Positions 2,440-24,213 of a stretch of DNA of 64,000 bases are shown piece by piece. Every line of letters begins with the position of its first letter. The stretch's first letter is position 1. Under the pieces are notes generated by a model. It did not search any database. It had not been told where the DNA came from and saw nothing but the letters and a program-made list of their open reading frames with translations. Origin of the DNA: Hydrolagus colliei (Eukaryota); the NCBI GenBank assembly GCA_035084275.1, contig CM068773.1:1798001-1862000 (forward strand). The letters run 5' to 3'. A program made the translations under genes and the position numbers.

Positions 2440-2524
2440 GGGGAAAGACCCCAAAAGGGAAAGAAAGGATGCGGAAGTATACATAAAAGACACCGTACTC
2501 TTTCGGGTAAAGGAGAACAGAAAA

Positions 2525-3751
2525 ATGGATAGGAAAACCTTTATAAGGGAAGTACTGATCCAAATATGCGGAAGCACCAAGGAAAAAATGAGGTGCGTTT
2601 ACGAGGACGGGGAAAAGAGAAGGTACGAGGTCACATGTACCTCGTACGACGAGGCAGTGAAACTGAAAACAGTGGCACTGCAGAACCAGGGGAATGAACT
2701 GATGTCAGCCTATGAGGTGACAACGGCATTCCAAGAAAGACAGAGGCAGGAGAGGAGAGCCGTGGTTAGAATGAGCGACCCGCAAGTGCCGGCGTCGGAA
2801 ATCAGGTTATATCTTAACAGGCAGTGTGAGGAGATCCAGTCGATCTCCGAAATACTGGAAGACGGGATCTGGACATCCGAATGGGAAGTCCTTCTGAAAT
2901 TGGGGAGGAAAGGAGAGGGTAATGTGGTACATATCCCCTCCCGTTTCACCATTGGGAGTTTCAGGGGAACTATTTTTTACCCTGGACAACCCCGAGCATG
3001 CCTAAGATGTGGGCAAGTGGGGCATTACGTGGCAGCCTGCACACAAACAATGTGCTGGAACTGCAAGGGACTGGGACATGTGGCTAAGGAGTGCACATTG
3101 GGTAAGAGATGTGACCTATGTGGAGAAACAGGTCACCTCTACCGCACGTGCCCACAAAGAAGGGGGTCTAAAATAATGCAAAGCCGGGAGGTTGGGAGAC
3201 AGGAAGGGAGAAAGGAGTCAGGGGAAGGGAAAGGACAGGACGAGGAACTGGGTGGGGAAGTTTTGGGGGGGGTAGAGATACCCTTGGAGAGGAGGGAGGG
3301 TGAGTCAGGACGCACCGGTGAGGAGGAAATGGACACTTTGGACAATTCCAAACGGGACAGAGAAACCTGGCAGGTAGTCGGGAAAAGTAGCCGGAAAAAA
3401 AAGGGGATACAACTCAAAAGAAGCGGCTATGATAGTGATAGTGACGGAGGAAAGAGGAGGGAGAAAGGAGGGAGAAAGGAGGAAGGAACCCCTGCCCCCC
3501 CCCCAAAAAGGCAGCTGATGGAGGTGGTGGAGGTAGTGGAAAAAACCTCAAAGAAAGGGAAAGAGACTAAAGAGACAGAAAAAGGAAAAGAACTTGGGAG
3601 GACCCCTGAACCTGAACCCGAAGCAGGGAAGACGCCGGAGGAGACGGAAAAGAGGACAAACAACCCAACCAAGACGGGAGACAACCCCGGAGGAGATGGA
3701 GAGGAAAAAGGACTGGAACAGATGGAAGAGGGGGGAAACGGGCGAGTATAA
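2525..3751 (+). pseudogene. Tx1 ORF1, 5'-truncated (3x CCHC zinc knuckle)
   Basis: CLRCGQVGHYVAAC, CWNCKGLGHVAKEC, CDLCGETGHLYRTC; lacks the N-terminal half present in copy 4. Confidence 0.85.
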
Positions 3752-3760
3752 AAAATGTAA

Positions 3761-7165: not shown

Positions 7166-7727
7166 TATGCCACTGCTTAGAACGTCAGGGATACTATCCG
7201 CAGTGCTTGTGGGGGGACGCTCGACCTGTAACCAGAGAGTGTCCCCAAGTGAAGGGTTTCTTTTGTAGATGCCTCTCCCCATAAAGGGGAGAGCATCGGT
7301 GGGTGTTTTTTTCCCAAATGTCTGTTTCTGTTTTTTTGGCCTACCATCCGGTAAGGAAAGGATGGTGGAGCTGGGATTAGCCCCTTTGTAACTGCTCCCT
7401 GTAAAAAAAGGCAGCAGTGCAGAGAAACGAGGAGGCCTGACATAAGGAAATGTGGGGATTAGGCGTTTTTGTGTCGAGAACGACAGGTTTTTTGTTTTTT
7501 TCTCCACAAAGACGGTGGAAGGGTTGGTTTTGTTGGGAGTGGTGATTGGGTTGGTTTTTCTGTTCCGCGTGGGTACTGAGTCAAGGCCGATGCGGAATGT
7601 CACGGGAAAAAGGATTTAGGCGATTTAGATGTCACGGGGAAGGTTTAAAAAAAAACAAATCTATATGTTTTTAACAAAAAAATAAATATATTTGTTTAAT
7701 AAAAAAATAAAAAAAATAAAAAAAAAA

Positions 7728-7742
7728 TTGTGCCTTAGAGTG
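7728..7742 (+). repeat. Target-site sequence between copies 2 and 3 (15 bp, TTGTGCCTTAGAGTG)
   Basis: Identical to 14496-14510 and 21330-21344. Confidence 0.9.
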
Positions 7743-7932
7743 GAATCGAGCAGAGAGAGCTACGGACGGTGTGAGTATTGGTTTGTTTGTGGTGGACGCG
7801 GCAGGAGAGTTTGGTTTGAATTATTGTTTATTTTGGGGCTAAGAGAGAGTAGGTGGTTTTGTTGGGTTTGTGGTGGTGTGGGGGGGTGATTCCCTTCTTC
7901 CTTCTTCCTGGCGAGGGGCTTTGGGCCCGGCC

Positions 7933-10515
7933 ATGGGAAGAAAGAACAAGGAAATGAAGGGGAAAAAAGAGGCGGAGGGCGAGAGCAGTTTGGAAAAAGG
8001 AGAGGCAATGGAGAACTCTAGTGGGAGAGTGCAGAAGGAGAGAACAGAGAGCAGAGAGAAGGGGGACAGCAGGGGAGAGGGGGGAGAGGGAGGCAATGAA
8101 AGAAGAGGGAGAGAAATCAAACGAGGATAGAGAACAGGAGGGAAGGAGGCAAGGGAGAGTGGGGAAAAGGGGGAGGAGGTGGGGGTCAAGCCAGTAGTTA
8201 AGGAGGGGAAAACCCTGGGGCAACAGGTCAGGTCGAAATCCGTGGGGGGTTTCAGCGAGGCCGGTGCGGGAAGCCTGTTTGGGGGGGTGAGAAGGCAGTT
8301 ACTGGCGGTGGGAAGCCATGTTGGGGGGGAGAGAAGCGGGGAGGCAGCAACGGCGGGAAGCCGAGTGGCCGTGGTAGGAAGCAGTGGGGATAAGGAGACA
8401 AGGCCTATACCGGCGACGGGAAGCCGTGCGGCCGTGGTGGGAGGCCGTGGGGATAAGGAGTCAAAGCCTACCCCGGCGACGGGAAGCCGTAAGGCCGGGG
8501 TGGGAGGCCGTGTGGGTAAGGAGACAAGGCCTCTACCGGCGGCGCGAAGCTGTAGTGGGGGGGAGAGAAGCGGGGAGGCGGCTAAGGCAGGAAGCCGTGA
8601 GGGGGGGGTGGCGGAGAGAAACGGGGAGGCAGCAGCGGCGGGAAGCCGGGGGGGAAACGAGACAAGACCGGTACCGGCGGCGGGAAGAAGTAACGCGGTG
8701 GCGGGAAGCGGTGAGGCCGGGGTGGGTAACCGGGAGCCAGGAGCAAGAGGTCGGGAGGTAGCGGCGGGAAGCCGGAAAGAAGAGAATGAAGTTTGTGAGG
8801 CCGCGGCGGGAAGCGGTGAGAGACAAACGAGCGGAACCGTGGAGGTAAGCCACGAAACCACGGGGGGGTCCCGGGAGGCTGCACAGGCAGGAGTAGGGAC
8901 ACAAAAAGGCGCAGAGAGCGAAGCGAGGAAGGCTGAGAGGGAAGAGAAGACTAGAGACGGAGAGACCAGGGAGAGCAGAGGGGGGAGAACCCCCAGCACC
9001 GAGGCCGGAGGAGAGGCAGGGAGGAAAGAGCCCAGCCCCCCGGAAATGACGGAGGCGGGGCCAAAGAAGGCAGGAGAGGGAGGACCGGAAGTAGTAGCTC
9101 CCCCTAGTGGGGAGAAGGCTTCCACAAGTCAGGGAAAGGCAGGCCCCATAACTTATGCATCAGCGGTGGCGGCAAAAAAGGGGGGCCCAAAGGAAGACCC
9201 AAAGGGGAAAGACCCCAAAAGGGAAAGAAAGGATGCGGAAGTATACATAAAAGACACCGTACTCTTTCGGGTAAAGGAGAACAGAAAAATGGATAGGAAA
9301 ACCTTTATAAGGGAAGTACTGATCCAAATATGCGGAAGCACCAAGGAAAAAATGAGGTGCGTTTACGAGGACGGGGAAAAGAGAAGGTACGAGGTCACAT
9401 GTACCTCGTACGACGAGGCAGTGAAACTGAAAACAGTGGCACTGCAGAACCAGGGGAATGAACTGATGTCAGCCTATGAGGTGACAACGGCATTCCAAGA
9501 AAGACAGAGGCAGGAGAGGAGAGCCGTGGTTAGAATGAGCGACCCGCAAGTGCCGGCGTCGGAAATCAGGTTATATCTTAACAGGCAGTGTGAGGAGATC
9601 CAGTCGATCTCCGAAATACTGGAAGACGGGATCTGGACATCCGAATGGGAAGTCCTTCTGAAATTGGGGAGGAAAGGAGAGGGTAATGTGGTACATATCC
9701 TCTCCCGTTTCACCATTGGGAGTTTCAGGGGAACTATTTTTTACCCTGGACAACCCCGAGCATGCCTAAGATGTGGGCAAGTGGGGCATTACGTGGCAGC
9801 CTGCACACAAACAATGTGCTGGAACTGCAAGGGACTGGGACATGTGGCTAAGGAGTGCACATTGGGTAAGAGATGTGACCTATGTGGAGAAACAGGTCAC
9901 CTCTACCGCACGTGCCCACAAAGAAGGGGGTCTAAAATAATGCAAAGCCGGGAGGTTGGGAGACAGGAAGGGAGAAAGGAGTCAGGGGAAGGGAAAGGAC
10001 AGGACGAGGAACTGGGTGGGGAAGTTTTGGGGGGGGTAGAGATACCCTTGGAGAGGAGGGAGGGTGAGTCAGGACGCACCGGTGGGGAGGAAATGGACAC
10101 TTTGGACAATTCCAAACGGGACAGAGAAACCTGGCAGGTAGTCGGGAAAAGTAGCCGGAAAAAAAAGGGGATACAACTCAAAAGAAGCGGCTATGATAGT
10201 GATAGTGACGGAGGAAAGAGGAGGGAGAAAGGAGGGAGAAAGGAGGAAGGAACCCCTGCCCCCCCCCCAAAAAGGCAGCTGATGGAGGTGGTGGAGGTAG
10301 TGGAAAAAACCTCAAAGAAAGGGAAAGAGACTAAAGAGACAGAAAAAGGAGAAGAACTTGGGAGGACCCCTGAACCTGAACCCGAAGCAGGGAAGACGCC
10401 GGAGGAGACGGAAAAGAGGACAAACAACCCAACCAAGACGGGAGACAACCCCGGAGGAGATGGAGAGGAAAAAGGACTGGAACAGATGGAAGAGGGGGGA
10501 AACGGGCGAGTATAA
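7933..10515 (+). pseudogene. Tx1 ORF1 with premature TAG at 8128-8130
   Basis: GCCATGG start at 7933; GGATAG here versus GGGGAG in copy 4; otherwise colinear with the copy 4 ORF1. Confidence 0.88.
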
Positions 10516-10524
10516 AAAATGTAA

Positions 10525-13500
10525 ATGGCACTGCGGATAGGTTCCCTGAACGTTAAGAGCGTTAAAAATTCCAAGCGTTGCGTAGCGACGCTTCAGGGCC
10601 TATCCAGAGTCAAGGCCGATATTCTGTTTCTGCAGGAGTGCTGGATTCCACACTCCAACAGTTACAGAACTTGGGCAAAGTGGTGGGACCCCTACGGACC
10701 CTCTGTGTGGTCAGGGGGAAATGACACCCGGGCATCGGGTGTGGCGGTCCTACTGAGAGGGAAAAACCTCACCATCACCGACTATAAGGAGGTGGTGGGG
10801 GGCAGAATCCTTGTGGTGGATGTGACGTACAATGAAGCCCCGATTAGGCTCATTAATGTGTACGCTCCATCAAAGAGGAAGGACCAGGTGGCCCTTTTCC
10901 GGATGCTACCTCCCTGGCTGCTTACACCCAAACCAGTCATCCTGGGAGGAGATTTTAATTGTATTCTGGAGAGAGACGGGAGATCAACCAGATCTGATGG
11001 GGAGTTAAGGGCTGCGTCCAAGCTGCTCCAAAAAGTGGTTGCAGATGGACGTTTGAGTGACGTTTTCAAGGCTCCAGATGATGGGGCCCCCAAACGATTC
11101 ACCTATTCTAACCCCAGTGGGTCGGTCTTCTCACGAATAGATTTTCTATTCGTATCGAGAAGACTAGAAGTGACTAAGACTGAAGTGAGGCCGGCGTCCC
11201 TTACCGACCATCGCCTCCTGCTGACGAACTTACTAGTTCACGGAAGCACGAGGAGGGGTCGAGGGACGTGGAAGCTGAACGTAAAGCTTTTGACCCGTAA
11301 GAATGTAGAGGAGTTGCGGAAGGAGTACCGAGGGTGGAAAACCTTGAGGGACTTCTGTGACTCCTCTACAGAATGGTGGGAAATGGTGAAGAGTAGAATC
11401 AAAGAATTCTTTGTCCGAAAAGGGGTTCAATTGGCAAAGGCCACGAACCGGGAAAGAGAGAGACTGCAGAAGGAGTTGCAAAAGCTCCTAAAGCAGCAGC
11501 TAGAAGGTATAGAGGTTAGGGAGGCAATTAAAGAGGTGAGAGACCAGCAAGGAGTGCTGCTCGCCTCGGAAGCCTCCAAGATCTTTTTCCGCTCCAGAGT
11601 GCGCACGATAGAACAAGACGAGAAGTGTACTAGCTTCTTCTTCCGGAAAGTGAACAGAGGTAGCTCTGTGATTTCCGGGTTGAAGGATAGAGACGACTCT
11701 GTGTGCACAGAACAGGAAGACATGAGGAGGATCGCAAGATCCTTCTATGAGGACCTGTACCGCGAGAAAGCCACGGAGAGCATGGCCACTCGGGATTTTC
11801 TCTCTGCCCTCACCGAAGTGGTGGACGAGGGGAGTCGAGAACACCTGGATCGGCCGCTCTCGTTTGAAGAGCTGACCAAGACGGTAGGTTCCCTCAGGAC
11901 AGGTAAGACCCCGGGGAGCGATGGCCTCCCGGTGGAACTGTACTTAGTCCTGTGGGACGTGATCGGACCGGTCCTCCTGGAAGTGTACGAGAGTATGCTT
12001 CAAGAAGGAACCATGGCAGACTCGATGAGGAAAGGTAACATCACCTTGATCTATAAAGAGAAAGGCAAGAAGGCGGATTTAAAGAACTGGAGACCTATAT
12101 CTCTATTAAACGTAGACTATAAGATCTTAGCAAAGGTGATCTCAGAGAGGATGAAGACTGTCATGGAGCAGGTAATTCACCCCGATCAGACCTGCGCGGT
12201 GCCAGGCCGGAGGATCTCTGACAACCTTGGGTTGTTAAGGGATACCATCGCCTACGTGCAGGAGAGAGGGGGGAAGACCTGCCTCATCAGTCTGGACCAA
12301 GAGAAAGCTTTTGACCGAGTATCTCATGACTATATGTATGAGGTACTTGCCAAAATGGGTTTCGGACAAAGAATTCGCGATTGGGTCCACCTGCTCTACA
12401 GAGATATCTGCAGTGCAGTGATGGTTAATGGGAACGAAACGCTGCCCTTCCCCGTCAGGTCGGGAGTAAGACAGGGGTGCCCCCTCTCCCCTATCCTGTT
12501 TGTCTGTTGCATCGAGCCCTTTGCACAGGCAATCAGGAGGGAGCAGAACATCAAAGGCGTCATCATCCCGGGCAGCCAAGGCATGCAAGCCAAGGTGTCC
12601 TTGTATATGGATGATGTTACGGTCTTTTGCTCAGATCACCGATCGATTGAGAGCCTGATGGGTATCTGCAATCTGTTTGAACGGGCTTCGGGTGCCAAAG
12701 TGAATCGCCAAAAAAGTGAGGTGATGTACTTTGGCAACTGGCAAGACCGGGCGAAGGTACCTTTTGAGGTAAAACCAGAGTACATTAAAATCTTAGGCAT
12801 CTGGTTTGGGGCCGCTGGGGCAAGGGGGAAGAACTGGGAGATGGCAATAGCGCAAATTAGGGGACGGTTGAAGCAGTGGCAGGAACGCACGCTTTCAATC
12901 ACTGGGAAGAACCTGGTGATTAAGTGTGAGGCGATCTCTGGATTACTGTACGTGGCGCAAGTTTGGCCCTTGACCAAACGCAGCGCCACCGCAGTCACCA
13001 GAGCTATCTTTAGGTTTGTCTGGAGCTCTGGGATGGATCGTGTCCGCAGGGACGCCATGTACAAGACCCCAGACAAAGGAGGGAAGGGTGTCCCTGATGT
13101 AGCCAGGACTATCATGGCCACCTTTGTGTGTGGCTGCGTGAGGGTCTGCCAGGAGCCAAGATATGAAGGCACTGCGTGCAGATATATGCTGGGCTTCTAT
13201 CTGTACCCAGTGCTAAGAAGGTTAGGTTTGGCTGAGCTGCCACGGAACGCCCCTCTGGGTTGGAATGTCCCGAGATACCTGGGGGAGATCGAGACATTCC
13301 TATCCGAGAACAGGGTGGATCCCTCTGAAGTTCCCAGGTGGACACCACGGACGGTGTTAGACATCATCCGAGAGAGAGAGGTGGACGAAACTTTGGTAGG
13401 GTACCCTCCGTTGACCGTTAGTCACATCTGGGAGAACGTTTCATCCCCAGCTCTGACTAACAAACACCAGGATGTGGCCTGGATGACGGTCAAGAGAGTT

Positions 13501-13929
13501 CTTGGACTCAAGAGCTTTCTGACAAGAAGAGGCTTAGTGCAGTCAGAGAGTTGCCCTCGGGAGGGCTGTGGAGGGAAGGAGAATGAGGAACATCTGTTCC
13601 TGCATTGTGCCTTTGCCAAACAGGTGTGGAACAAGACAGAGTGGCTTCTCTCGCGGTTCATCCCGGGAGTCCCTCTGTCAGCCCACTCGGTGTTGTATGG
13701 CCTCTTCCCAGGAACACACGAAGTGACCGACCTACAATGTGCCTGGAGGGTCATCAACTCGGTCAAGCAGGCCCTATGGGTCTGCCGCAACCGAGAGACC
13801 TCCGGACATGGAAATAGGTCAGTGTCGGCCTGTTACAGGAGGGCGATGGTAAGTGTCCGGGAATATGTCATCAGGGACGCCCTGGAGATAGGTTCAGTCG
13901 AGGCTAAGGATAGGTGGGGTGTGTTTTAG
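10525..13929 (+). CDS. Tx1 ORF2 (APE-RT), 1134 aa
   Basis: Same motifs as copy 2; intact. Confidence 0.95.
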   Translation: MALRIGSLNVKSVKNSKRCVATLQGLSRVKADILFLQECWIPHSNSYRTWAKWWDPYGPSVWSGGNDTRASGVAVLLRGKNLTITDYKEVVGGRILVVDVTYNEAPIRLINVYAPSKRKDQVALFRMLPPWLLTPKPVILGGDFNCILERDGRSTRSDGELRAASKLLQKVVADGRLSDVFKAPDDGAPKRFTYSNPSGSVFSRIDFLFVSRRLEVTKTEVRPASLTDHRLLLTNLLVHGSTRRGRGTWKLNVKLLTRKNVEELRKEYRGWKTLRDFCDSSTEWWEMVKSRIKEFFVRKGVQLAKATNRERERLQKELQKLLKQQLEGIEVREAIKEVRDQQGVLLASEASKIFFRSRVRTIEQDEKCTSFFFRKVNRGSSVISGLKDRDDSVCTEQEDMRRIARSFYEDLYREKATESMATRDFLSALTEVVDEGSREHLDRPLSFEELTKTVGSLRTGKTPGSDGLPVELYLVLWDVIGPVLLEVYESMLQEGTMADSMRKGNITLIYKEKGKKADLKNWRPISLLNVDYKILAKVISERMKTVMEQVIHPDQTCAVPGRRISDNLGLLRDTIAYVQERGGKTCLISLDQEKAFDRVSHDYMYEVLAKMGFGQRIRDWVHLLYRDICSAVMVNGNETLPFPVRSGVRQGCPLSPILFVCCIEPFAQAIRREQNIKGVIIPGSQGMQAKVSLYMDDVTVFCSDHRSIESLMGICNLFERASGAKVNRQKSEVMYFGNWQDRAKVPFEVKPEYIKILGIWFGAAGARGKNWEMAIAQIRGRLKQWQERTLSITGKNLVIKCEAISGLLYVAQVWPLTKRSATAVTRAIFRFVWSSGMDRVRRDAMYKTPDKGGKGVPDVARTIMATFVCGCVRVCQEPRYEGTACRYMLGFYLYPVLRRLGLAELPRNAPLGWNVPRYLGEIETFLSENRVDPSEVPRWTPRTVLDIIREREVDETLVGYPPLTVSHIWENVSSPALTNKHQDVAWMTVKRVLGLKSFLTRRGLVQSESCPREGCGGKENEEHLFLHCAFAKQVWNKTEWLLSRFIPGVPLSAHSVLYGLFPGTHEVTDLQCAWRVINSVKQALWVCRNRETSGHGNRSVSACYRRAMVSVREYVIRDALEIGSVEAKDRWGVF

Positions 13930-14480
13930 TATGCCACTGCTTAGAACGTCAGGGATACTATCCGCAGTGCTTGTGGGGGGACGCTCGACCTGTAACCAGA
14001 GAGTGTCCCCAAGTGAAGGGTTTCTTTTGTAGATGCCTCTCCCCATAAAGGGGAGAGCATCGGTGGGTGTGTTTTTTTCCCAAATGTCTGTTTCTGTTTT
14101 TTTTGGCCTACCATCCGGTAAGGAAAGGATGGTGGAGCTGGGATTAGCCCCTTTGTAACTGCTCCCTGTAAAAAAAGGCAGCAGTGCAGAGAAACGAGGA
14201 GGCCTGACATAAGGAAATGTGGGGATTAGGCGTTTTTGTGTCGAGAACGACAGGTTTTTTGTTTTTTTCTCCACAAAGACGGTGGAAGGGTTGGTTTTGT
14301 TGGGAGTGGTGATTGGGTTGGTTTTTCTGTTCCGCGTGGTTACTGAGTCAAGGCCGATGCGGAATGTCACGGGAAAAAGGATTTAGGCGATTTAGATGTC
14401 ACGGGGAAGGTTTAAAAAAACAAATCTATATGTTTTTAACAAAAAATAAATATATTTGTTTAAAAAAAAAAAAAAAAAAA

Positions 14481-14510
14481 TGCAGAGGAAGTAATTTGTG
14501 CCTTAGAGTG
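14481..14510 (+). repeat. Target-site sequence between copies 3 and 4 (30 bp, TGCAGAGGAAGTAATTTGTGCCTTAGAGTG)
   Basis: Last 19 bp identical to 21326-21344. Confidence 0.9.
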
Positions 14511-14700
14511 GAATCGAGCAGAGAGAGCTACGGACGGTGTGAGTATTGGTTTGTTTGTGGTGGACGCGGCAGGAGAGTTTGGTTTGAATTATTGTTTATT
14601 TTGGGGCTAAGAGAGAGTAGGTGGTTTTGTTGGGTTTGTGGTGGTGTGGGGGGGTGATTCCCTTCTTCCTTCTTCCTGGCGAGGGGCTTTGGGCCCGGCC

Positions 14701-17358
14701 ATGGGAAGAAAGAACAAGGAAATGAAGGGGAAAAAAGAGGCGGAGGGCGAGAGCAGTTTGGAAAAAGGAGAGGCAATGGAGAACTCTAGTGGGAGAGTGC
14801 AGAAGGAGAGAACAGAGAGCAGAGAGAAGGGGGACAGCAGGGGAGAGGGGGGAGAGGGAGGCAATGAAAGAAGAGGGAGAGAAATCAAACGAGGGGAGAG
14901 AACAGGAGGGAAGGAGGCAAGGGAGAGTGGGGAAAAGGGGGAGGAGGTGGGGGTCAAGCCAGTAGTTAAGGAGGGGAAAACCCTGGGGCAACAGGTCAGG
15001 TCGAAATCCGTGGGGGGTTTCAGCGAGGCCGGTGCGGGAAGCCTGTTTGGGGGGGTGAGAAGGCAGTTACTGGCGGTGGGAAGCCATGTTGGGGGGGAGA
15101 GAAGCGGGGAGGCAGCAACGGCGGGAAGCCGAGTGGCCGTGGTAGGAAGCAGTGGGGATAAGGAGACAAGGCCTATACCGGCGACGGGAAGCCGTGCGGC
15201 CGTGGTGGGAGGCCGTGGGGACAAGGAGACAAGGCCTATACCGGCGACGGGAAGCCGTGTGGCCGTGGTGGGAGGCCGTGGGGATAAGGAGTCAAAGCCT
15301 ACCCCGGCGACGGAAAGCCGTAAGGCCGGGGTGGGAGGCCGTGTGGGTAAGGCGACAAGGCCTCTACCGGCGGCGCGAAGCTGTAGTGGGGGGGAGAGAA
15401 GCGGGGAGGCGGCTAAGGCAGGAAGCCGTGAGGGGGGGGTGGCGGAGAGAAACGGGGAGGCAGCAGCGGCGGGAAGCCGGGGGGGAAACGAGACAAGACC
15501 GGTACCGGCGGCGGGAAGAAGTAACGCGGTGGCGGGAAGCGGTGAGGCCGGGGTGGGTAACCGGGAGCCAGGAGCAAGAGGTCGGGAGGTAGCGGCGGGA
15601 AGCCGGAAAGAAGAGAATGAAGTTTGTGAGGCCGCGGCGGGAAGCGGTGAGAGACAAACGAGCGGAACCGTGGAGGTAAGCCACGAAACCACGGGGGGGT
15701 CCCGGGAGGCTGCACAGGCAGGAGTAGGGACACAAAAAGGCGCAGAGAGCGAAGCGAGGAAGGCTGAGAGGGTGGAGAAGACTAGAGACGGAGAGACCAG
15801 GGAGAGCAGAGGGGGGAGAACCCCCAGCACCGAGGCCGGAGGAGAGGCAGGGAGGAAAGAGCCCAGCCCCCCGGAAATGACGGAGGCGGGGCCAAAGAAG
15901 GCAGCAGAGGGAGGACCGGAAGTAGTAGCTCCCCCTAGTGGGGAGAAGGCTTCCACAAGTCAGGGAAAGGCAGGCCCCATAACTTATGCATCAGCGGTGG
16001 CGGCAAAAAAGGGGGGCCCAAAGGAAGACCCAAAGGGGAAAGACCCCAAAAGGGAAAGAAAGGATGCGGAAGTATACATAAAAGACACCGTACTCTTTCG
16101 GGTAAAGGAGAACAGAAAAATGGATAGGAAAACCTTTATAAGGGAAGTACTGATCCAAATATGCGGAAGCACCAAGGAAAAAATGAGGTGCGTTTACGAG
16201 GACGGGGAAAAGAGAAGGTACGAGGTCACATGTACCTCGTACGACGAGGCAGTGAAACTGAAAACAGTGGCACTGCAGAACCAGGGGAATGAACTGATGT
16301 CAGCCTATGAGGTGACAACGGCATTCCAAGAAAGACAGAGGCAGGAGAGGAGAGCCGTGGTTAGAATGAGCGACCCGCAAGTGCCGGCGTCGGAAATCAG
16401 GTTATATCTTAACAGGCAGTGTGAGGAGATCCAGTCGATCTCCGAAATACTGGAAGACGGGATCTGGACATCCGAATGGGAAGTCCTTCTGAAATTGGGG
16501 AGGAAAGGAGAGGGTAATGTGGTACATATCCCCTCCCGTTTCACCATTGGGAGTTTCAGGGGAACTATTTTTTACCCTGGACAACCCCGAGCATGCCTAA
16601 GATGTGGGCAAGTGGGGCATTACGTGGCAGCCTGCACACAAACAATGTGCTGGAACTGCAAGGGACTGGGACATGTGGCTAAGGAGTGCACATTGGGTAA
16701 GAGATGTGACCTATGTGGAGAAACAGGTCACCTCTACCGCACGTGCCCACAAAGAAGGGGGTCTAAAATAATGCAAAGCCGGGAGGTTGGGAGACAGGAA
16801 GGGAGAAAGGAGTCAGGGGAAGGGAAAGGACAGGACGAGGAACTGGGTGGGGAAGTTTTGGGGGGGGTAGAGATACCCTTGGAGAGGAGGGAGTGTGAGT
16901 CAGGACGCACCGGTGGGGAGGAAATGGACACTTTGGACAATTCCAAACGGGACAGAGAAACCTGGCAGGTAGTCGGGAAAAGTAGCCGGAAAAAAAAGGG
17001 GATACAACTCAAAAGAAGCGGCTATGATAGTGATAGTGACGGAGGAAAGAGGAGGGAGAAAGGAGGGAGAAAGGAGGGAGAAAGGAGGAAGGAACCCCTG
17101 CCCCCCCCCCCAAAAAGGCAGCTGATGGAGGTGGTGGAGGTAGTGGAAAAAACCTCAAAGAAAGGGAAAGAGACTAAAGAGACAGAAAAAGGAGAAGAAC
17201 TTGGGAGGACCCCTGAACCTGAACCCGAAGCAGGGAAGACGCCGGAGGAGACGGAAAAGAGGACAAACAACCCAACCAAGACGGGAGACAACCCCGGAGG
17301 AGATGGAGAGGAAAAAGGACTGGAACAGATGGAAGAGGGGGGAAACGGGCGAGTATAA
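14701..17358 (+). CDS. Tx1 ORF1 (low-complexity N-terminus, YASAV motif, 3x CCHC knuckle; ZCCHC3-like architecture)
   Basis: ATG in GCCATGG context at 14701; open to TAA at 17358. Confidence 0.9.
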   Translation: MGRKNKEMKGKKEAEGESSLEKGEAMENSSGRVQKERTESREKGDSRGEGGEGGNERRGREIKRGERTGGKEARESGEKGEEVGVKPVVKEGKTLGQQVRSKSVGGFSEAGAGSLFGGVRRQLLAVGSHVGGERSGEAATAGSRVAVVGSSGDKETRPIPATGSRAAVVGGRGDKETRPIPATGSRVAVVGGRGDKESKPTPATESRKAGVGGRVGKATRPLPAARSCSGGERSGEAAKAGSREGGVAERNGEAAAAGSRGGNETRPVPAAGRSNAVAGSGEAGVGNREPGARGREVAAGSRKEENEVCEAAAGSGERQTSGTVEVSHETTGGSREAAQAGVGTQKGAESEARKAERVEKTRDGETRESRGGRTPSTEAGGEAGRKEPSPPEMTEAGPKKAAEGGPEVVAPPSGEKASTSQGKAGPITYASAVAAKKGGPKEDPKGKDPKRERKDAEVYIKDTVLFRVKENRKMDRKTFIREVLIQICGSTKEKMRCVYEDGEKRRYEVTCTSYDEAVKLKTVALQNQGNELMSAYEVTTAFQERQRQERRAVVRMSDPQVPASEIRLYLNRQCEEIQSISEILEDGIWTSEWEVLLKLGRKGEGNVVHIPSRFTIGSFRGTIFYPGQPRACLRCGQVGHYVAACTQTMCWNCKGLGHVAKECTLGKRCDLCGETGHLYRTCPQRRGSKIMQSREVGRQEGRKESGEGKGQDEELGGEVLGGVEIPLERRECESGRTGGEEMDTLDNSKRDRETWQVVGKSSRKKKGIQLKRSGYDSDSDGGKRREKGGRKEGERRKEPLPPPPKRQLMEVVEVVEKTSKKGKETKETEKGEELGRTPEPEPEAGKTPEETEKRTNNPTKTGDNPGGDGEEKGLEQMEEGGNGRV

Positions 17359-17367
17359 AAAATGTAA

Positions 17368-20300
17368 ATGGCACTGCGGATAGGTTCCCTGAACGTTAAG
17401 AGCGTTAAAAATTCCAAGCGTTGCGTAGCGACGCTTCAGGGCCTATCCAGAGTCAAGGCCGATATTCTGTTTCTGCAGGAGTGCTGGATTCCACACTCCA
17501 ACAGTTACAGAACTTGGGCAAAGTGGTGGGACCCCTACGGACCCTCTGTGTGGTCAGGGGGAAATGACACCCGGGCATCGGGTGTGGCGGTCCTACTGAG
17601 AGGGAAAAACCTCACCATCACCGACTATAAGGAGGTGGTGGGGGGCAGAATCCTTGTGGTGGATGTGACGTACAATGAAGCCCCGATTAGGCTCATTAAT
17701 GTGTACGCTCCATCAAAGAGGAAGGACCAGGTGGCCCTTTTCCGGATGCTACCTCCCTGGCTGCTTACACCCAAACCAGTCATCCTGGGAGGAGATTTTA
17801 ATTGTATTCTGGAGAGAGACGGGAGATCAACCAGATCTGATGGGGAGTTAAGGGCTGCGTCCAAGCTGCTCCAAAAAGTGGTTGCAGATGGACGTTTGAG
17901 TGACGTTTTCAAGGCTCCAGATGATGGGGCCCCCAAACGATTCACCTATTCTAACCCCAGTGGGTCGGTCTTCTCACGAATAGATTTTCTATTCGTATCG
18001 AGAAGACTAGAAGTGACTAAGACTGAAGTGAGGCCGGCGTCCCTTACCGACCATCGCCTCCTGCTGACGAACTTACTAGTTGACGGAAGCACGAGGAGGG
18101 GTCGAGGGACGTGGAAGCTGAACGTAAAGCTTTTGACCCGTAAGAATGTAGAGGAGTTGCGGAAGGAGTACCGAGGGTGGAAAACCTTGAGGGACTTCTG
18201 TGACTCCTCTACAGAATGGTGGGAAATGGTGAAGAGTAGAATCAAAGAATTCTTTGTCCGAAAAGGGGTTCAATTGGCAAAGGCCACGAACCGGGAAAGA
18301 GAGAGACTGCAGAAGGAGTTGCAAAAGCTCCTAAAGCAGCAGCTAGAAGGTATAGAGGTTAGGGAGGCAATTAAAGAGGTGAGAGACCAGCAAGGAGTGC
18401 TGCTCGCCTCGGAAGCCTCCAAGATCTTTTTCCGCTCCAGAGTGCGCACGATAGAACAAGACGAGAAGTGTACTAGCTTCTTCTTCCGGAAAGTGAACAG
18501 AGGTAGCTCTGTGATTTCCGGGTTGAAGGATAGAGACGACTCTGTGTGCACAGAACAGGAAGACATGAGGAGGATCGCAAGATCCTTCTATGAGGACCTG
18601 TACCGCGAGAAAGCCACGGAGAGCATGGCCACTCGGGATTTTCTCTCTGCCCTCACCGAAGTGGTGGACGAGGGGAGTCGAGAACACCTGGATCGGCCGC
18701 TCTCGTTTGAAGAGCTGACCAAGACGGTAGGTTCCCTCAGGACAGGTAAGACCCCGGGGAGCGATGGCCTCCCGGTGGAACTGTACTTAGTCCTGTGGGA
18801 CGTGATCGGACCGGTCCTCCTGGAAGTGTACGAGAGTATGCTTCAAGAAGGAACCATGGCAGACTCGATGAGGAAAGGTAACATCACCTTGATCTATAAA
18901 GAGAAAGGCAAGAAGGCGGATTTAAAGAACTGGAGACCTATATCTCTATTAAACGTAGACTATAAGATCTTAGCAAAGGTGATCTCAGAGAGGATGAAGA
19001 CTGTCATGGAGCAGGTAATTCACCCCGATCAGACCTGCGCGGTGCCAGGCCGGAGGATCTCTGACAACCTTGGGTTGTTAAGGGATACCATCGCCTACGT
19101 GCAGGAGAGAGGGGGGAAGACCTGCCTCATCAGTCTGGACCAAGAGAAAGCTTTTGACCGAGTATCTCATGACTATATGTATGAGGTACTTGCCAAAATG
19201 GGTTTCGGACAAAGAATTCGCGATTGGGTCCACCTGCTCTACAGAGATATCTGCAGTGCAGTGATGGTTAATGGGAACGAAACGCTGCCCTTCCCCGTCA
19301 GGTCGGGAGTAAGACAGGGGTGCCCCCTCTCCCCTATCCTGTTTGTCTGTTGCATCGAGCCCTTTGCACAGGCAATCAGGAGGGAGCAGAACATCAAAGG
19401 CGTCATCATCCCGGGCAGCCAAGGCATGCAAGCCAAGGTGTCCTTGTATATGGATGATGTTACGGTCTTTTGCTCAGATCACCGATCGATTGAGAGCCTG
19501 ATGGGTATCTGCAATCTGTTTGAACGGGCTTCGGGTGCCAAAGTGAATCGCCAAAAAAGTGAGGTGATGTATTTTGGCAACTGGCAAGACCGGGCGAAGG
19601 TACCTTTTGAGGTAAAACCAGAGTACATTAAAATCTTAGGCATCTGGTTTGGGGCCGCTGGGGCAAGGGGGAAGAACTGGGAGATGGCAATAGCGCAAAT
19701 TAGGGGACGGTTGAAGCAGTGGCAGGAACGCACGCTTTCAATCACTGGGAAGAACCTGGTGATTAAGTGTGAGGCGATCTCTGGATTACTGTACGTGGCG
19801 CAAGTTTGGCCCTTGACCAAACGCAGCGCCACCGCAGTCACCAGAGCTATCTTTAGGTTTGTCTGGAGCTCTGGGATGGATCGTGTCCGCAGGGACGCCA
19901 TGTACAAGACCCCAGACAAAGGAGGGAAGGGTGTCCCTGATGTAGCCAGGACTATCATGGCCACCTTTGTGTGTGGCTGCGTGAGGGTCTGCCAGGAGCC
20001 AAGATATGAAGGCACTGCGTGCAGATATATGCTGGGCTTCTATCTGTACCCAGTGCTAAGAAGGTTAGGTTTGGCTGAGCTGCCACGGAACGCCCCTCTG
20101 GGTTGGAATGTCCCGAGATACCTGGGGGAGATCGAGACATTCCTATCCGAGAACAGGGTGGATCCCTCTGAAGTTCCCAGGTGGACACCACGGACGGTGT
20201 TAGACATCATCCGAGAGAGAGAGGTGGACGAAACTTTGGTAGGGTACCCTCCGTTGACCGTTAGTCACATCTGGGAGAACGTTTCATCCCCAGCTCTGAC

Positions 20301-20772
20301 TAACAAACACCAGGATGTGGCCTGGATGACGGTCAAGAGAGTTCTTGGACTCAAGAGCTTTCTGACAAGAAGAGGCTTAGTGCAGTCAGAGAGTTGCCCT
20401 CGGGAGGGCTGTGGAGGGAAGGAGAATGAGGAACATCTGTTCCTGCATTGTGCCTTTGCCAAACAGGTGTGGAACAAGACAGAGTGGCTTCTCTCGCGGT
20501 TCATCCCGGGAGTCCCTCTGTCAGCCCACTCGGTGTTGTATGGCCTCTTCCCAGGAACACACGAAGTGACCGACCTACAATGTGCCTGGAGGGTCATCAA
20601 CTCGGTCAAGCAGGCCCTATGGGTCTGCCGCAACCGAGAGACCTCCGGACATGGAAATAGGTCAGTGTCGGCCTGTTACAGGAGGGCGATGGTAAGTGTC
20701 CGGGAATATGTCATCAGGGACGCCCTGGAGATAGGCTCGGTCGAGGCTAAGGATAGGTGGGGTGTGTTTTAG
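17368..20772 (+). CDS. Tx1 ORF2 (APE-RT), 1134 aa
   Basis: Intact; differs from the other copies by 1-2 aa. Confidence 0.95.
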   Translation: MALRIGSLNVKSVKNSKRCVATLQGLSRVKADILFLQECWIPHSNSYRTWAKWWDPYGPSVWSGGNDTRASGVAVLLRGKNLTITDYKEVVGGRILVVDVTYNEAPIRLINVYAPSKRKDQVALFRMLPPWLLTPKPVILGGDFNCILERDGRSTRSDGELRAASKLLQKVVADGRLSDVFKAPDDGAPKRFTYSNPSGSVFSRIDFLFVSRRLEVTKTEVRPASLTDHRLLLTNLLVDGSTRRGRGTWKLNVKLLTRKNVEELRKEYRGWKTLRDFCDSSTEWWEMVKSRIKEFFVRKGVQLAKATNRERERLQKELQKLLKQQLEGIEVREAIKEVRDQQGVLLASEASKIFFRSRVRTIEQDEKCTSFFFRKVNRGSSVISGLKDRDDSVCTEQEDMRRIARSFYEDLYREKATESMATRDFLSALTEVVDEGSREHLDRPLSFEELTKTVGSLRTGKTPGSDGLPVELYLVLWDVIGPVLLEVYESMLQEGTMADSMRKGNITLIYKEKGKKADLKNWRPISLLNVDYKILAKVISERMKTVMEQVIHPDQTCAVPGRRISDNLGLLRDTIAYVQERGGKTCLISLDQEKAFDRVSHDYMYEVLAKMGFGQRIRDWVHLLYRDICSAVMVNGNETLPFPVRSGVRQGCPLSPILFVCCIEPFAQAIRREQNIKGVIIPGSQGMQAKVSLYMDDVTVFCSDHRSIESLMGICNLFERASGAKVNRQKSEVMYFGNWQDRAKVPFEVKPEYIKILGIWFGAAGARGKNWEMAIAQIRGRLKQWQERTLSITGKNLVIKCEAISGLLYVAQVWPLTKRSATAVTRAIFRFVWSSGMDRVRRDAMYKTPDKGGKGVPDVARTIMATFVCGCVRVCQEPRYEGTACRYMLGFYLYPVLRRLGLAELPRNAPLGWNVPRYLGEIETFLSENRVDPSEVPRWTPRTVLDIIREREVDETLVGYPPLTVSHIWENVSSPALTNKHQDVAWMTVKRVLGLKSFLTRRGLVQSESCPREGCGGKENEEHLFLHCAFAKQVWNKTEWLLSRFIPGVPLSAHSVLYGLFPGTHEVTDLQCAWRVINSVKQALWVCRNRETSGHGNRSVSACYRRAMVSVREYVIRDALEIGSVEAKDRWGVF

Positions 20773-21325
20773 TATGCCACTGCTTAGAACGTCAGGGATA
20801 CTATCCGCAGTGCTTGTGGGGGGACGCTCGACCTGTAACCAGAGAGTGTCCCCAAGTGAAGGGTTTCTTTTGTAGATGCCTCTCCCCATAAAGGGGAGAG
20901 CATCGGTGGGTGTGTTTTTTTCCCAAATGTCTGTTTCTGTTTTTTTGGCCTACCATCCGGTAAGGAAAGGATGGTGGAGCTGGGATTAGCCCCTTTGTAA
21001 CTGCTCCCTGTAAAAAAAGGCAGCAGTGCAGAGAAACGAGGAGGCCTGACATAAGGAAATGTGGGGATTAGGCGTTTTTGTGTCGAGAACGACAGGTTTT
21101 TTGTTTTTTTCTCCACAAAGACGGTGGAAGGGTTGGTTTTGTTGGGAGTGGTGATTGGGTTGGTTTTTCTGTTCCGCGTGGGTACTGAGTCAAGGCCGAT
21201 GCGGAATGTCACGGGAAAAAGGATTTAGGCGATTTAGATGTCACGGGGAAGGTTTTAAAAAAAAACAAATCTATATGTTTTTAACAAAAAAATAAATATA
21301 TTTGTTTAAAAAAAAAAAATAATAA

Positions 21326-24213
21326 TAATTTGTGCCTTAGAGTGCATGTATGTAAATGCACGAAGTTTGAGAAATAAAATTGGTGAGCTGCAGGCTCAGG
21401 TTGCTGCGAAGCGATATGATGTTATAGCAGTAACAGAGACTTGGCTCCAGCATGGGCAGGAATGGGAGTTGAACATTCCTGGTTATAATGTATTCAGGAG
21501 GGATAGAGAAGGGAGAAAAGGGGGCGGGGTGGCAATTTTAGTTAAGGACTCAGTGACTGCCTTAGAAAGGAACGAGGTGGAAGAAGGACTAAAAACCGAA
21601 TCTATCTGGTTAGAATTGAGGAATAAAAAAGGTGCAGTTACACTGTTAGGGGTATACTATAGACCACCAAATAGTGGGGAGGAGATAGACAAGCAGATCT
21701 GCAAGCGTATCACGGAGAAATGCAGAGCTAATAGAGTAGTGATAATGGGTGACTTCAACTATCCCAACATAGACTGGCAGAATAGTAGAGTAAAGGGCAA
21801 GGAGGGAGAAGAATTCCTGAAGTGTGTGCAGGACAACTTTCTTGATCAGTATGTTTCCAGTCCAACGAGGAAAGAAGCATTGCTGGATCTAGTTTTGGGA
21901 AATGAGGTAGGGCAAGTTCAACAGGTTTCTGTAGGTGAGCATCTAGGGAATAGTGACCACAATATCGTTAGATTCAGAATAGTTATGGAAAGGGATAAGG
22001 AACGATCACAGGTGAGGACACTCAACTGGAAAAGGGCTAATTTCAATGAGTTGAGGTGGGACCTAGCCAAGGTGGATTGGAAAGAAAAATTGGCAGGTAA
22101 GACAACTAACGAGCAGTGGGCAGCGTTCAAAGAGGAGATAGTTCAGGCACAGGTCAAAAGCATCCCCACAAAGGTGAAATGTAAGGCATCCAAACCTCCC
22201 TGGATGACTAAGGAAATCGGGGCCAAAATCAAACAAAAAAAAGAGGCTTATGATAAGTGTCAGGCTCAAAATTCAGAAGGGAACCAAGCAGAATATAGGA
22301 AGTGTAGGATAGATCTAAAAAAGGAAGTTAGAGGGGCAAAGAGACTGCATGAAAAACAATTAGCGAGTAAGATTAAGGGGAACCCTAAGGTTTTTTACCA
22401 ACATATTAAGAGTAAAAGGTTGGTCAAGGAGAGGGTGGGGCCAATTAGGGACCTAGGAGGAAATCTCATTGTGGAGGCAGAGGGCATGGCTGATGTACTG
22501 AATGAGTACTTCGCCTCTGTCTTCACAAAAGAAAATGATACAGCCAATGCCATGGTATTAGAGGAGAGGGTAGGAGAAATGAATAGAATAATTATAACCA
22601 GAGAGGAAGTGCTAAAAAGGTTGACGTCGCTCAAGGTGGATAAGTCACCTGGTCCGGATGGGATGCACCATAGGTTACTAAGTGAGGCACGGGAGCAAAT
22701 AGCAGGGACTCTGGCCACGATCTTTCAATCTTCCTTGGACACAGGGGTCGTGCCAGAGGACTGGAGGATAGCTAATGTTACTCCCTTGTATAAAAAGGGG
22801 CAGAAGGACAAGCCTGGTAACTACAGACCAGTCAGTCTAACGTCGGTAGTGGGCAAAATTCTAGAGTCCATAATCAGGGACAAGGTAGATCTTCACTTAG
22901 AAAGATATAGGCTAATAAAGGACAGTCAACATGGATTTGTTAAAGGCAAATCTTGCCTTACAAATCTGATAGAATTTTTTGATGAGGTAACGGAATGGGT
23001 GGATAATGGTAGCGCAGTTGATGTAGTTTACATGGACTTTCAAAAGGCATTTGACAAAGTGCCACATGAGAGACTTATTATGAAATTAAAGGCCCATGGC
23101 GTAAAAGGGACAGTGGCAGCGTGGATTCACAACTGGCTGCGAGACAGAAAGCAGAGAGTTGTAGTGAGCGGCTGTTTTTCAGATTGGAGGGAAGTGAGCA
23201 GTGGTGTGCCACAGGGATCGGTTTTGGGACCATTGCTGTTTGTAATCTACATCAATGATCTGGACTTGGGTGTACGGAGTACAGTTTCCAAGTTTGCAGA
23301 TGACACTAAGTTAGGGAGAATAGTAAACAGTGAGGAGGATAGTAGCCATCTGCAAGAGGATATAGACAAATTGGTAAAGTGGGCAGACACATGGCAGATG
23401 AAGTTTAATGCAGAGAAGTGTGAGGTGATGCATTTTGGGAGAAGAAATGAAGGGAGGCAATATAGGCTAGATAGTACAATTTTAAATGGTGTAAAGGAAC
23501 AGAGAGACCTGGGGATTTGTGTTAGTGACTCGTTGAAGGTGGCAGGACAGGTAGACAAGGCTGTTAAGAAGGCATATGGGATACTAGGCTTTATAAATAG
23601 GGGTATAGAGTACAAAAGTCAGGAAGTGCTGACTAACCTCTATAGGACTTTGGTGAGGCCTCAGCTGGAATACTGTGTTCAATTCTGGTCACCACACTAC
23701 AGAAAGGATGTGAAGGCATTGGAAAGGGTACAACGAAGATTTACTAGGATGGTGCCAGGATTGAGGTACTTCAGCTATGAGGAGAGGCTAGATAGGCTAG
23801 GGTTATTCTCTCTGGAGCAGAGAAGATTGAGGGGAGACCTAATAGAGGTTTATAAGATCATGAGGGGTTTCGACAGAGCAAATAGAGAAAAACTATTTCC
23901 ACTCGTGGGTGAATCTGTGACTCGTGGTCACAGATTTAAAATAGTTTCAAGGCGCAGTAGAGGGGAGCTGAGGAGAAATTTTTTCACTCAGCGAGTTGTT
24001 CGAATCTGGAATGCATTGCCTGAAAAGTTGGTGGAGGCTGATTCGATAACAACTTTTAAAAGGGAATTAGATCTTTATTTAGGGAGAACGGGTCTATTAG
24101 GCTATGGGGAGCGGGCAGGGCAGTGGGATTGAATCGCTCTTTTCAAAGAGCCGGCACAGACTAGATGGGTCGAATGGCCTCCTTTTGTGCCGTAAAATTC
24201 TATGATTCTATGA
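21326..24213 (+). mobile_element. CR1 LINE, 3' part downstream of the Tx1 array
   Basis: CR1-type ORF2, short 3' UTR and (ATTCTATG)2 terminal repeat at 24197-24212. Confidence 0.95.
21346..24132 (+). CDS. CR1 ORF2 (APE-RT), 928 aa, intact
   Basis: MYVNARSL, VTETWL, MGDFNYP, SDH, YMDFQKAFDKVPH, GVPQGSVLGP, FADD, LEYCVQFWSP motifs typical of CR1. Confidence 0.95.
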   Translation: MYVNARSLRNKIGELQAQVAAKRYDVIAVTETWLQHGQEWELNIPGYNVFRRDREGRKGGGVAILVKDSVTALERNEVEEGLKTESIWLELRNKKGAVTLLGVYYRPPNSGEEIDKQICKRITEKCRANRVVIMGDFNYPNIDWQNSRVKGKEGEEFLKCVQDNFLDQYVSSPTRKEALLDLVLGNEVGQVQQVSVGEHLGNSDHNIVRFRIVMERDKERSQVRTLNWKRANFNELRWDLAKVDWKEKLAGKTTNEQWAAFKEEIVQAQVKSIPTKVKCKASKPPWMTKEIGAKIKQKKEAYDKCQAQNSEGNQAEYRKCRIDLKKEVRGAKRLHEKQLASKIKGNPKVFYQHIKSKRLVKERVGPIRDLGGNLIVEAEGMADVLNEYFASVFTKENDTANAMVLEERVGEMNRIIITREEVLKRLTSLKVDKSPGPDGMHHRLLSEAREQIAGTLATIFQSSLDTGVVPEDWRIANVTPLYKKGQKDKPGNYRPVSLTSVVGKILESIIRDKVDLHLERYRLIKDSQHGFVKGKSCLTNLIEFFDEVTEWVDNGSAVDVVYMDFQKAFDKVPHERLIMKLKAHGVKGTVAAWIHNWLRDRKQRVVVSGCFSDWREVSSGVPQGSVLGPLLFVIYINDLDLGVRSTVSKFADDTKLGRIVNSEEDSSHLQEDIDKLVKWADTWQMKFNAEKCEVMHFGRRNEGRQYRLDSTILNGVKEQRDLGICVSDSLKVAGQVDKAVKKAYGILGFINRGIEYKSQEVLTNLYRTLVRPQLEYCVQFWSPHYRKDVKALERVQRRFTRMVPGLRYFSYEERLDRLGLFSLEQRRLRGDLIEVYKIMRGFDRANREKLFPLVGESVTRGHRFKIVSRRSRGELRRNFFTQRVVRIWNALPEKLVEADSITTFKRELDLYLGRTGLLGYGERAGQWD

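What the first reader, a model, noticed from the sequence alone, without database searches (positions are those of the whole stretch)
7728..21370. Tx1-clade retrotransposon that site-specifically targets a CR1 LINE and builds a tandem array there
Seen: three poly(A) tails are each followed by the same sequence (15 bp at 7728, 30 bp at 14481, 19 bp at 21326), always ending at ...CCTTAGAGTG. After the first two, a new element starts at the same base (GAATCG). After the last, the sequence continues as C-ATG-TAT-GTA-AAT, the start of CR1 ORF2. The reconstructed empty site TGCAGAGGAAGTAATTTGTGCCTTAGAGTG|CATGTATG reads AEEVICALECMYVN in the CR1 ORF2 frame, fitting the CR1 L-x-C-x-Y-x-N-A-R-S endonuclease start, so the spacer looks like CR1 DNA. 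Known: Tx1-clade APE endonucleases are often sequence-specific (Xenopus Tx1L into Tx1D transposons, Keno into U2 snRNA, Dewa in tRNA arrays, Kibi/Koshi in microsatellites). Inference: this family parasitises a young, abundant CR1 as a multicopy safe harbour, and each TSD regenerates the target. I know of no described CR1-targeting Tx1 family but cannot confirm novelty.
Basis: partly seen in the sequence, partly recalled or inferred. Interest (0 to 1): 0.93.

Follow-up and report, generated by a model that had tools for sequence, protein, structure and literature searches.

The report
Tx1-like LINE array inside a CR1
A young jumping gene of the Tx1/L1 type has landed several times at exactly the same base of another jumping gene (a CR1), building a head-to-tail row; this fits the known habit of Tx1 elements of aiming at one sequence, here with a target class I did not find described.

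Summary
The window starts inside a head-to-tail row of four near-identical (99.4-99.7%) Tx1/L1-type LINEs: E0, 5'-truncated E1, E2 and E3. Three poly(A) tails are followed by 15, 30 and 19 bp of one sequence, always ending at the same base. Two are followed by the element's first base, the last by a CR1 ORF2.

Each unit has its own tail and spacer length, so these are separate retrotransposition events, not tandem duplication. E3 has both ORFs intact.

The spacer is probably CR1 coding DNA. The 19 bp next to the CR1 ORF2 encode the L-x-C motif that 9 of 17 informative CR1 relatives carry just before N-A-R-S. The CR1 ends in two ATTCTATG octamers.

The fourth junction (E0/E1) has no spacer and fits a template jump.

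Tx1 families that target DNA transposons and LTR retrotransposons, and tandem insertions sandwiching a target duplication, are already in print (Kojima 2015). This looks like a new member of a known kind with a LINE as target.

Scan note s1-902123 is the same stretch read again, not other DNA.

The parts
1..2439 (+). E0: 3' part of a Tx1-like element (ORF2 from about residue 543, 3' UTR, A25 tail at 2415-2439). Its 5' part lies outside the window.
2440..7727 (+). E1: 5'-truncated Tx1-like element. It starts at the position equivalent to 9204 of E2, directly after the E0 tail, with an AAA microhomology. ORF1 remnant 2525-3751, intact ORF2 3761-7165, A-rich tail broken by single Ts.
7728..7742 (+). 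15-nt target copy between E1 and E2
7743..14480 (+). E2: full-length Tx1-like element. 5' UTR 7743-7932; ORF1 7933-10515 with a premature stop at codon 66; 63-bp repeats 8354-8558 (3.2 copies); intact ORF2 10525-13929 (1134 aa: APE, RT, zf-RVT); A19 tail.
14481..14510 (+). 30-nt target copy between E2 and E3, the longest version of the spacer
14511..21325 (+). E3: full-length Tx1-like element with both ORFs open. ORF1 14701-17358 (885 aa; ZCCHC3-type RNA-binding domains plus CCHC knuckles; 63-bp repeats 15122-15389, 4.2 copies); ORF2 17368-20772 (1134 aa; endonuclease catalytic motifs present); tail A12 then TAA repeats.
21326..21344 (+). 19-nt target copy directly joined to the CR1 ORF2. In the CR1 frame, 21328-21345 reads I-C-A-L-E-C before the Met at 21346.
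21345..24212 (+). CR1-type LINE, downstream part. ORF2 21346-24132 (928 aa; APE + RT); 3' UTR ending in two ATTCTATG octamers at 24197-24212. Its 5' part is presumably upstream of the array, outside the window.

Best explanation
A young, probably still active LINE of the Tx1 group (L1 superfamily) inserted by target-primed reverse transcription at least three separate times at one site. The site is the 5' start of ORF2 of a very abundant CR1 LINE, in the same orientation as the CR1.

Shown: every full-length 5' end is joined after the same base. The poly(A)/target junction lies 15, 19 or at least 30 nt upstream of it. Each event therefore left a target duplication of a different length.

Inferred: the copy of the target upstream of each insertion stays intact up to the joining point, so it can be hit again, and the row grows upstream. 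The 30-nt duplication of E2 means E2 entered a site with at least 30 nt of target. So E1 (15 nt) came after E2, and E3 (19 nt) came either before or after E2. At least E1 entered a site whose downstream neighbour was already a Tx1 5' end. The determinants of recognition therefore lie in the about 30 nt upstream of the joining point, not in the CR1 sequence downstream.

Inferred: the E0/E1 junction (tail joined directly to an internal point of the element, AAA microhomology) is best read as a switch of the reverse transcriptase from one Tx1 RNA to the tail of a second one within a single event.

Inferred, not shown: the specificity comes from the APE-type endonuclease. It may be helped by homology between a CR1-derived leader on read-through transcripts and the target, which would explain an exact 5' junction beside a variable 3' junction. 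It also holds for the family genome-wide.
For: Junction sequences. The shared 13-mer is found 3 times against 0.04 expected.

The units are 99.4-99.7% identical but differ by substitutions, tails and repeat number. ORF2 proteins differ by 1-2 residues. E3 has both ORFs open; E2 has a stop at ORF1 codon 66.

Domains: APE, RT and zf-RVT in ORF2; RNA-binding domains plus CCHC knuckles in ORF1. Endonuclease catalytic motifs align with human L1-EN.

Relationship: X. laevis Tx1 ORF2 scores 323 bits at 29% identity, against about 278 bits for human L1 ORF2p chains. The FastTree places the element in a starred 24-row clade with X. laevis Tx1, apart from plant and oomycete L1-likes.

CR1 identity and CR1 origin of the spacer.

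Abundance: summed word depth of contigs on the CR1 part is 224,000-955,000 in run X1, against 2,700-11,200 on the Tx1 part. The tool warns that this is no copy number.

Published precedent: Tx1 families aimed at transposons, and tandem copies sandwiching a TSD read as sequential insertion (PMC4494074 passages). Tandem same-site insertion of Utopia in U2 genes (PMC4640811 passages).
Against: All evidence comes from one locus. No second genomic copy of the family and no empty CR1 site could be examined.

The window holds no other fragment of the element and no other CR1 that reaches the site.

In a sequence-specific APE element one would expect the first (bottom-strand) nick, that is the poly(A)/target junction, to be the exact one. 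Here it is the variable one.

Only the last about 11 nt of the spacer are tied to CR1 by the protein motif. The other 19 nt are tied only by being contiguous with them.

The tree has no labelled vertebrate L1, so Tx1 versus the fish-type L1 lineages is not settled.
Confidence: 0.7

Rival explanations
1. Local array growth without family-wide specificity. One element landed in the CR1 by chance. Later units were added only because a copy was already there. One route is transcripts that start 15-30 nt upstream in the flank and so carry a leader that guides the cDNA back to the same place. Another is reverse transcriptase jumping from the 5' end of one leader-bearing RNA to the tail of the next within one event.
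For: The E0/E1 junction shows that template jumps happen in this array. The variable 3' junction beside an exact 5' junction fits homology-guided joining. No second locus was seen.
Against: It needs transcripts with two different leader lengths. It still needs the last 19 nt to be ordinary target DNA. The source copies would themselves have to sit in the same CR1 site, which again implies targeting. Tx1-group elements are known for endonuclease-based specificity (passages).
Confidence: 0.2
2. Tandem duplication or unequal crossing-over of a single insertion.
For: High identity of the units. A repeat period of about 6.8 kb.
Against: Each unit has its own tail (A25, interrupted A, A19, A12 + TAA repeats). 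The spacers are 0, 15, 30 and 19 nt. One unit is 5'-truncated. Duplication would copy the tail and the spacer unchanged.
Confidence: 0.05
3. Assembly artefact: a long repeat collapsed or expanded wrongly.
For: Young multi-kb repeats are hard to assemble. I could not lay raw reads, only contigs.
Against: The units differ at scattered substitutions, in 63-bp repeat number and in an ORF1 stop codon. The junctions are each different and biologically coherent.
Confidence: 0.03

Closest known systems
Tx1-Mar families and other crocodilian Tx1 families (Kojima 2015, Genome Biol Evol; PMC4494074, passages read)
   Same: Tx1-group LINEs that insert preferentially at one place in another transposon: Mariner-N4_AMi, Harbinger, or, for Tx1-8_Crp and Tx1-4_AMi, LTR retrotransposons. 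The SINEU-3 elements they mobilise are often found in tandem sandwiching a TSD, read as sequential insertion.
   Different: The target here is a non-LTR element (CR1), inside its ORF2 5' region. The copies are 99.4-99.7% alike and one is fully open, whereas the crocodilian families are 85-87% from consensus. I could not see Fig. 3 or supplementary figs S3-S5 of that paper, which list targets.
Tx1L of Xenopus laevis in Tx1D (named in passages of PMC4494074 and PMC1950540; the primary papers were not held)
   Same: APE-type endonuclease and RT. Specific insertion into a multicopy transposon. ORF2 is 29% identical over 892 aligned positions.
   Different: The Tx1L target is a non-autonomous piggyBac DNA transposon. 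Tx1L ORF2 is longer (1308 against 1134 aa). In the tree the present element sits in a sister lineage with salamander and unnamed sequences.
R1/R2 and Utopia type same-site tandem insertions (PMC4640811 passages; R2 co-transcription mentioned in PMC4494074)
   Same: Repeated insertion at one site of a multicopy sequence. A possible dependence on transcription from the target.
   Different: Different clades, and for R2 and Utopia a different endonuclease type. Their targets are RNA genes, not a LINE.

Membership tests
Tx1 group of L1-superfamily non-LTR retrotransposons | ORF2 with an N-terminal APE-type endonuclease, RT and a C-terminal zinc-binding domain; poly(A) tail | tested here: met
   Pfam hits: Exo_endo_phos 7.7e-16, RVT_1 8.5e-43, zf-RVT 2.9e-08. 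Catalytic motifs align with L1-EN. A-tails seen.
Tx1 group of L1-superfamily non-LTR retrotransposons | RT/ORF2 phylogeny places it with Tx1 and not with L1 proper | tested here: inconclusive
   FastTree of 51 rows (47 of the 120 listed hits, chosen by hand; the query; 3 CR1 outgroup rows). The query falls in a 24-row clade (SH-like 98) with X. laevis Tx1, excluding plant and oomycete L1-likes and the Ciona pol-like protein. X. laevis Tx1 scores 323 bits against about 278 for human L1 ORF2p. No labelled vertebrate L1 was in the tree, and the careful/quick IQ-TREE run did not finish.
Tx1 group of L1-superfamily non-LTR retrotransposons | ORF1 with RNA-binding domain(s) and CCHC zinc knuckles rather than the mammalian L1 ORF1 type (that this separates the groups is recalled, not from a call) | tested here: met
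   RBD_ZCCHC3_2nd 6.4e-15, zf-CCHC 4.7e-10, zf-CCHC_2 5.4e-06. No L1 ORF1 family was listed at E <= 0.01.
Target-specific Tx1 family (criterion of Kojima 2015: one kind of sequence in more than 20% of flanks) | The same target next to a large share of genomic copies | not testable with these tools
Pattern and protein scans of the public collections gave 0 matches.
CR1 clade (identity of the target element) | APE+RT ORF2 and a 3' end with ATTCTRTG-type octamer repeats instead of poly(A) | tested here: met
   Pfam: Exo_endo_phos, Exo_endo_phos_2, RVT_1. Two ATTCTATG units at 24197-24212, where two other copies in the window also end. The octamer is named as the CR1-type tail in PMC5381603 (passage). 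No named CR1 reference was placed in a tree.
Sequential same-site insertion array | Units separated by a copy of the target duplication, each unit with its own tail | tested here: met
   2 of the 3 internal junctions carry a target copy (15 and 30 nt), and the end of the array carries 19 nt. The third internal junction has none and fits a template jump.

The most novel reading that the evidence does not exclude
The family is an obligate hyperparasite of one CR1 lineage. Its target sits at the ORF2 5' start, so it exists only in long, potentially coding-competent CR1 copies. Every insertion therefore cuts a CR1 ORF2 off from its upstream part. The element is co-transcribed from the CR1 5' promoter. 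Its exact 5' junction comes from pairing of a CR1-derived leader with the target, not from a precise second nick. This would be a LINE that lives on, and selectively disables, the master copies of another LINE.
Probability: 0.25. Interest if true: 0.65.

Novelty: new member of a known kind. Interest (0 to 1): 0.45.

Why it matters
If the specificity holds genome-wide, this is an intact, very young APE-type LINE with a target of about 30 nt. APE-type site-specific endonucleases are few, and they are of interest for aiming DNA integration (PMC1950540 abstract).

The target would be another LINE, which gives a natural case of competition between two retrotransposon families in a cartilaginous-fish genome.

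The variable 3' junction beside an exact 5' junction bears on how the second half of LINE integration is guided. That could be tested with the purified endonuclease and with transcript 5' ends.

Tried and rejected
Looked for an empty site or a second occupied site in the window: none. The 30-mer and the CR1 start each occur once within 3 mismatches. There is no Tx1 DNA elsewhere in the window, and the only other CR1 copies are two 5'-truncated ones.

Tried to reach other genomic copies.
- The look-up of sequencing runs listed 19 runs, all kept as contigs.
- Read laying on 20500-23000 with 4 runs (X1, X18, X5, X6) gave thousands of short contigs. It skipped 21282-21335 as a repeat and showed only 20 of the more than 2,100 loose-end rows, none at the junction. 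So neither empty sites nor other flanks could be read.

Protein searches for same-family CR1 fragments that would show the sequence upstream of the site found nothing closer than 56-57% identity. This held for the full ORF2 N-terminal region (28 hits) and for a 126-aa query including the six target-encoded residues (36 hits).

Exact-pattern scans of metagenome, genome and viral contigs found 0 matches. The search for related loci in metagenome contigs confirmed 0 of 11 pattern matches.

Scan notes hold no other copy of this family.

The protein atlas gave only unnamed APE+RT+zf-RVT clusters.

Rejected tandem duplication and assembly error, because the tails, spacers and internal differences are unit-specific.

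Rejected the idea that the spacer is the element's own 5' end. Its last 19 nt are contiguous in the window with the CR1 ORF2 and complete the CR1 N-terminal motif.

Literature: six searches turned up no CR1- or LINE-targeting Tx1 family. I read passages only of PMC4494074, PMC4640811, PMC3747384, PMC1950540 and PMC5381603. Figure 3 and supplementary figs S3-S5 of PMC4494074 list Tx1 targets and could not be seen. Repbase Reports are not in the library. So 'not in print' is not established.
Full report
**What is there**

The window begins inside a head-to-tail row of one LINE family.
- E0 (1-2439) is cut by the window start.
- E1 (2440-7727) is 5'-truncated.
- E2 (7743-14480) and E3 (14511-21325) are full length.

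After the tails of E1, E2 and E3 come 15, 30 and 19 nt of one sequence: 7728-7742, 14481-14510 and 21326-21344. They are nested, identical where they overlap, and all end at the same base. The first two are followed by the first base of the next element (GAATCG at 7743 and 14511). The third is followed by C-ATG at 21345-21348, the start of a 928-aa ORF.

The 13-mer shared by the three occurs 3 times in the window against 0.04 expected; 0 of 100 shuffles reached 3.

The 25-A tail of E0 runs directly into E1 at 2440. That point corresponds to 9204 of E2, where the full-length element has AAA before GGGG. There is no spacer there.

**The element**

ORF2 (1134 aa) has an APE-type endonuclease, RT and zf-RVT. 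ORF1 has ZCCHC3-type RNA-binding domains and two CCHC knuckles. The endonuclease aligns with human L1-EN with the QE, YAP, GDFN, S-x-ID and DH motifs in place.

Among 128 proteins at E <= 1e-30, the best are 43-45% identical (a Logan contig and Pleurodeles waltl). X. laevis Tx1 ORF2 scores 323 bits at 29% identity. Human L1 ORF2p chains in the PDB score about 278 bits.

A FastTree of 51 rows puts the element in a 24-row clade (SH-like 98) with X. laevis Tx1. That clade excludes plant and oomycete L1-likes and a Ciona pol-like protein. The rows were 47 hand-picked hits of the 120 listed, the query, and three CR1 rows as outgroup. No labelled vertebrate L1 was available, and the IQ-TREE run did not finish. 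Tx1-group membership is therefore likely but not settled.

**Age and independence of the units**

Pairwise identity is 99.4-99.7%. The three complete ORF2 proteins differ by 1-2 residues. E3 has ORF1 (885 aa) and ORF2 open. E2 has a stop at ORF1 codon 66. E2 has 3.2 and E3 has 4.2 copies of a 63-bp coding repeat.

The tails are A25, an A-run broken by single Ts, A19, and A12 followed by TAA repeats. Different tails, spacers and 5' ends mean separate reverse-transcription events. They argue against unequal crossing-over and against an assembly duplicate.

**The target**

The downstream ORF has APE (both Pfam endonuclease families) and RT. Its relatives, at 56% identity or less, are CR1-like ORF2s of frogs and unnamed contigs. 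The element ends at 24212 in two ATTCTATG units, where two other 5'-truncated copies in the window also end. This octamer type is named as the alternative LINE tail in PMC5381603 (passage). Eight papers hold it together with CR1 (listing).

Of the 28 relatives, 17 have an N-x-R-S/G motif with at least 7 residues before it. Nine of these 17 have L at -6 and C at -4; 12 of 17 have C at -4. The 11 rows set aside were 6 that start too close to the motif and 5 without it in the first 160 residues.

The window itself reads I-C-A-L-E-C-M-Y-V-N-A-R-S from 21328. L and C fall in the 19-nt spacer and the Cys codon straddles the joining point. So at least the 3' part of the spacer is CR1 coding sequence. 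The other 11-19 nt are tied to CR1 only by contiguity.

**Abundance**

Contigs of four public runs were laid on 20500-23000 at 88% likeness.
- Run X1 (organism A): summed word depth is 2,743-11,217 in the ten Tx1 bins and 224,304-954,685 in the twenty CR1 bins. The jump falls at the bin that starts at 21340.
- Run X18 (organism A, another sample): 6,221-26,301 against 338,085-1,234,024.
- Run X5 (a second species): 43-1,987 against 16,095-1,365,161.
- Run X6: 5 contigs laid.

The tool states that these sums are no copy numbers. They show only that the CR1 family, including its ORF2 start, is far more represented than the Tx1 family, and that both exist in a second species. The tool skipped 21282-21335 as a repeat and showed no loose ends at the junction. 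Empty sites and alternative flanks stayed unseen.

**Mechanism (inference)**

By the usual target-primed model, the poly(A)/target junction marks the primer-strand nick and the 5' junction marks the second-strand break. Here the first lies 15, 19 or at least 30 nt upstream, and the second is invariant.

E2's 30-nt duplication requires a site with at least 30 nt of target. So E1 came after E2, into the regenerated upstream copy, whose downstream neighbour was already Tx1 and not CR1. E3 may be older or younger than E2. Recognition therefore rests on the sequence upstream of the joining point.

An exact 5' junction beside a loose 3' junction is unusual for a specific APE element. It suggests either resection of the primer end to a point that pairs with the tail (the E3 tail ends in TAA repeats where the target has TAA), or 5' joining guided by a CR1-derived leader on read-through RNA. 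The second idea is discussed for R2 and SINEU in PMC4494074 (passage).

The spacer-less E0/E1 junction, with its AAA microhomology, fits a template jump between two RNAs.

**Comparison with what is known**

Kojima 2015 (PMC4494074, passages) reports the following:
- many Tx1-clade elements are target-specific;
- Tx1 of X. laevis sits in the piggyBac-type Tx1D;
- crocodilian Tx1-Mar families sit in Mariner-N4_AMi, Tx1-9_AMi in Harbinger elements, and Tx1-8_Crp and Tx1-4_AMi in LTR retrotransposons;
- tandem SINEU-3 copies sandwiching a TSD come from sequential insertion.

Utopia is occasionally inserted in tandem in U2 genes (PMC4640811). The kind is therefore known.

A CR1 or other LINE as target did not appear in six literature searches or in the passages read.

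**What could not be done**

The decisive test is the flanks of all genomic copies together with the empty CR1 sites. It was out of reach:
- the single read-laying run gave no junction rows;
- protein searches held no same-family fragment;
- scans of metagenome, genome and viral contigs gave 0;
- scan notes on this genome list other Tx1 observations at other targets (a Gypsy LTR/PBS junction, a TTAA-flanked element) but no second copy of this family.

Those notes also call the genome chimaera-type. I did not verify that.

**Verdict**

Repeated independent same-site insertion into CR1-derived sequence is shown for this locus. Family-wide specificity is likely (about 0.7) but unproven. It is a new member of a known kind, of moderate interest.

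Noticed in passing
window 8354-8558 and 15122-15389: A 63-bp (21-residue) tandem repeat inside ORF1 of the Tx1-like element differs in copy number between neighbouring units: 3.2 in E2 against 4.2 in E3. It accounts for the different unit lengths.
   Followed up: partly
window 36049-38526: Two 5'-truncated copies of the same CR1 family lie tail to tail, meeting at about 37008. They are 93-99% identical to the CR1 at 21345-24212 and form a near-perfect inverted repeat of about 1 kb.
   Followed up: no
window 21342-21362: The joining point lies inside a 6-nt inverted repeat (GTGCAT ... ATGCAC, 9 nt apart) at the CR1 ORF2 start. This may be chance.
   Followed up: no
window 29728-29911: A run of 184 N (gap or masked stretch), left untouched. 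Several overlapping ORFs on both strands surround it (29273-30092).
   Followed up: no
window 20500-21339 (run X5): A second species holds contigs at 88% likeness or more to the Tx1 ORF2 end and the proximal 3' UTR, but almost none to the last 250 bp of the 3' UTR. The 3' end of the family seems to have been replaced or to have diverged between the species.
   Followed up: no
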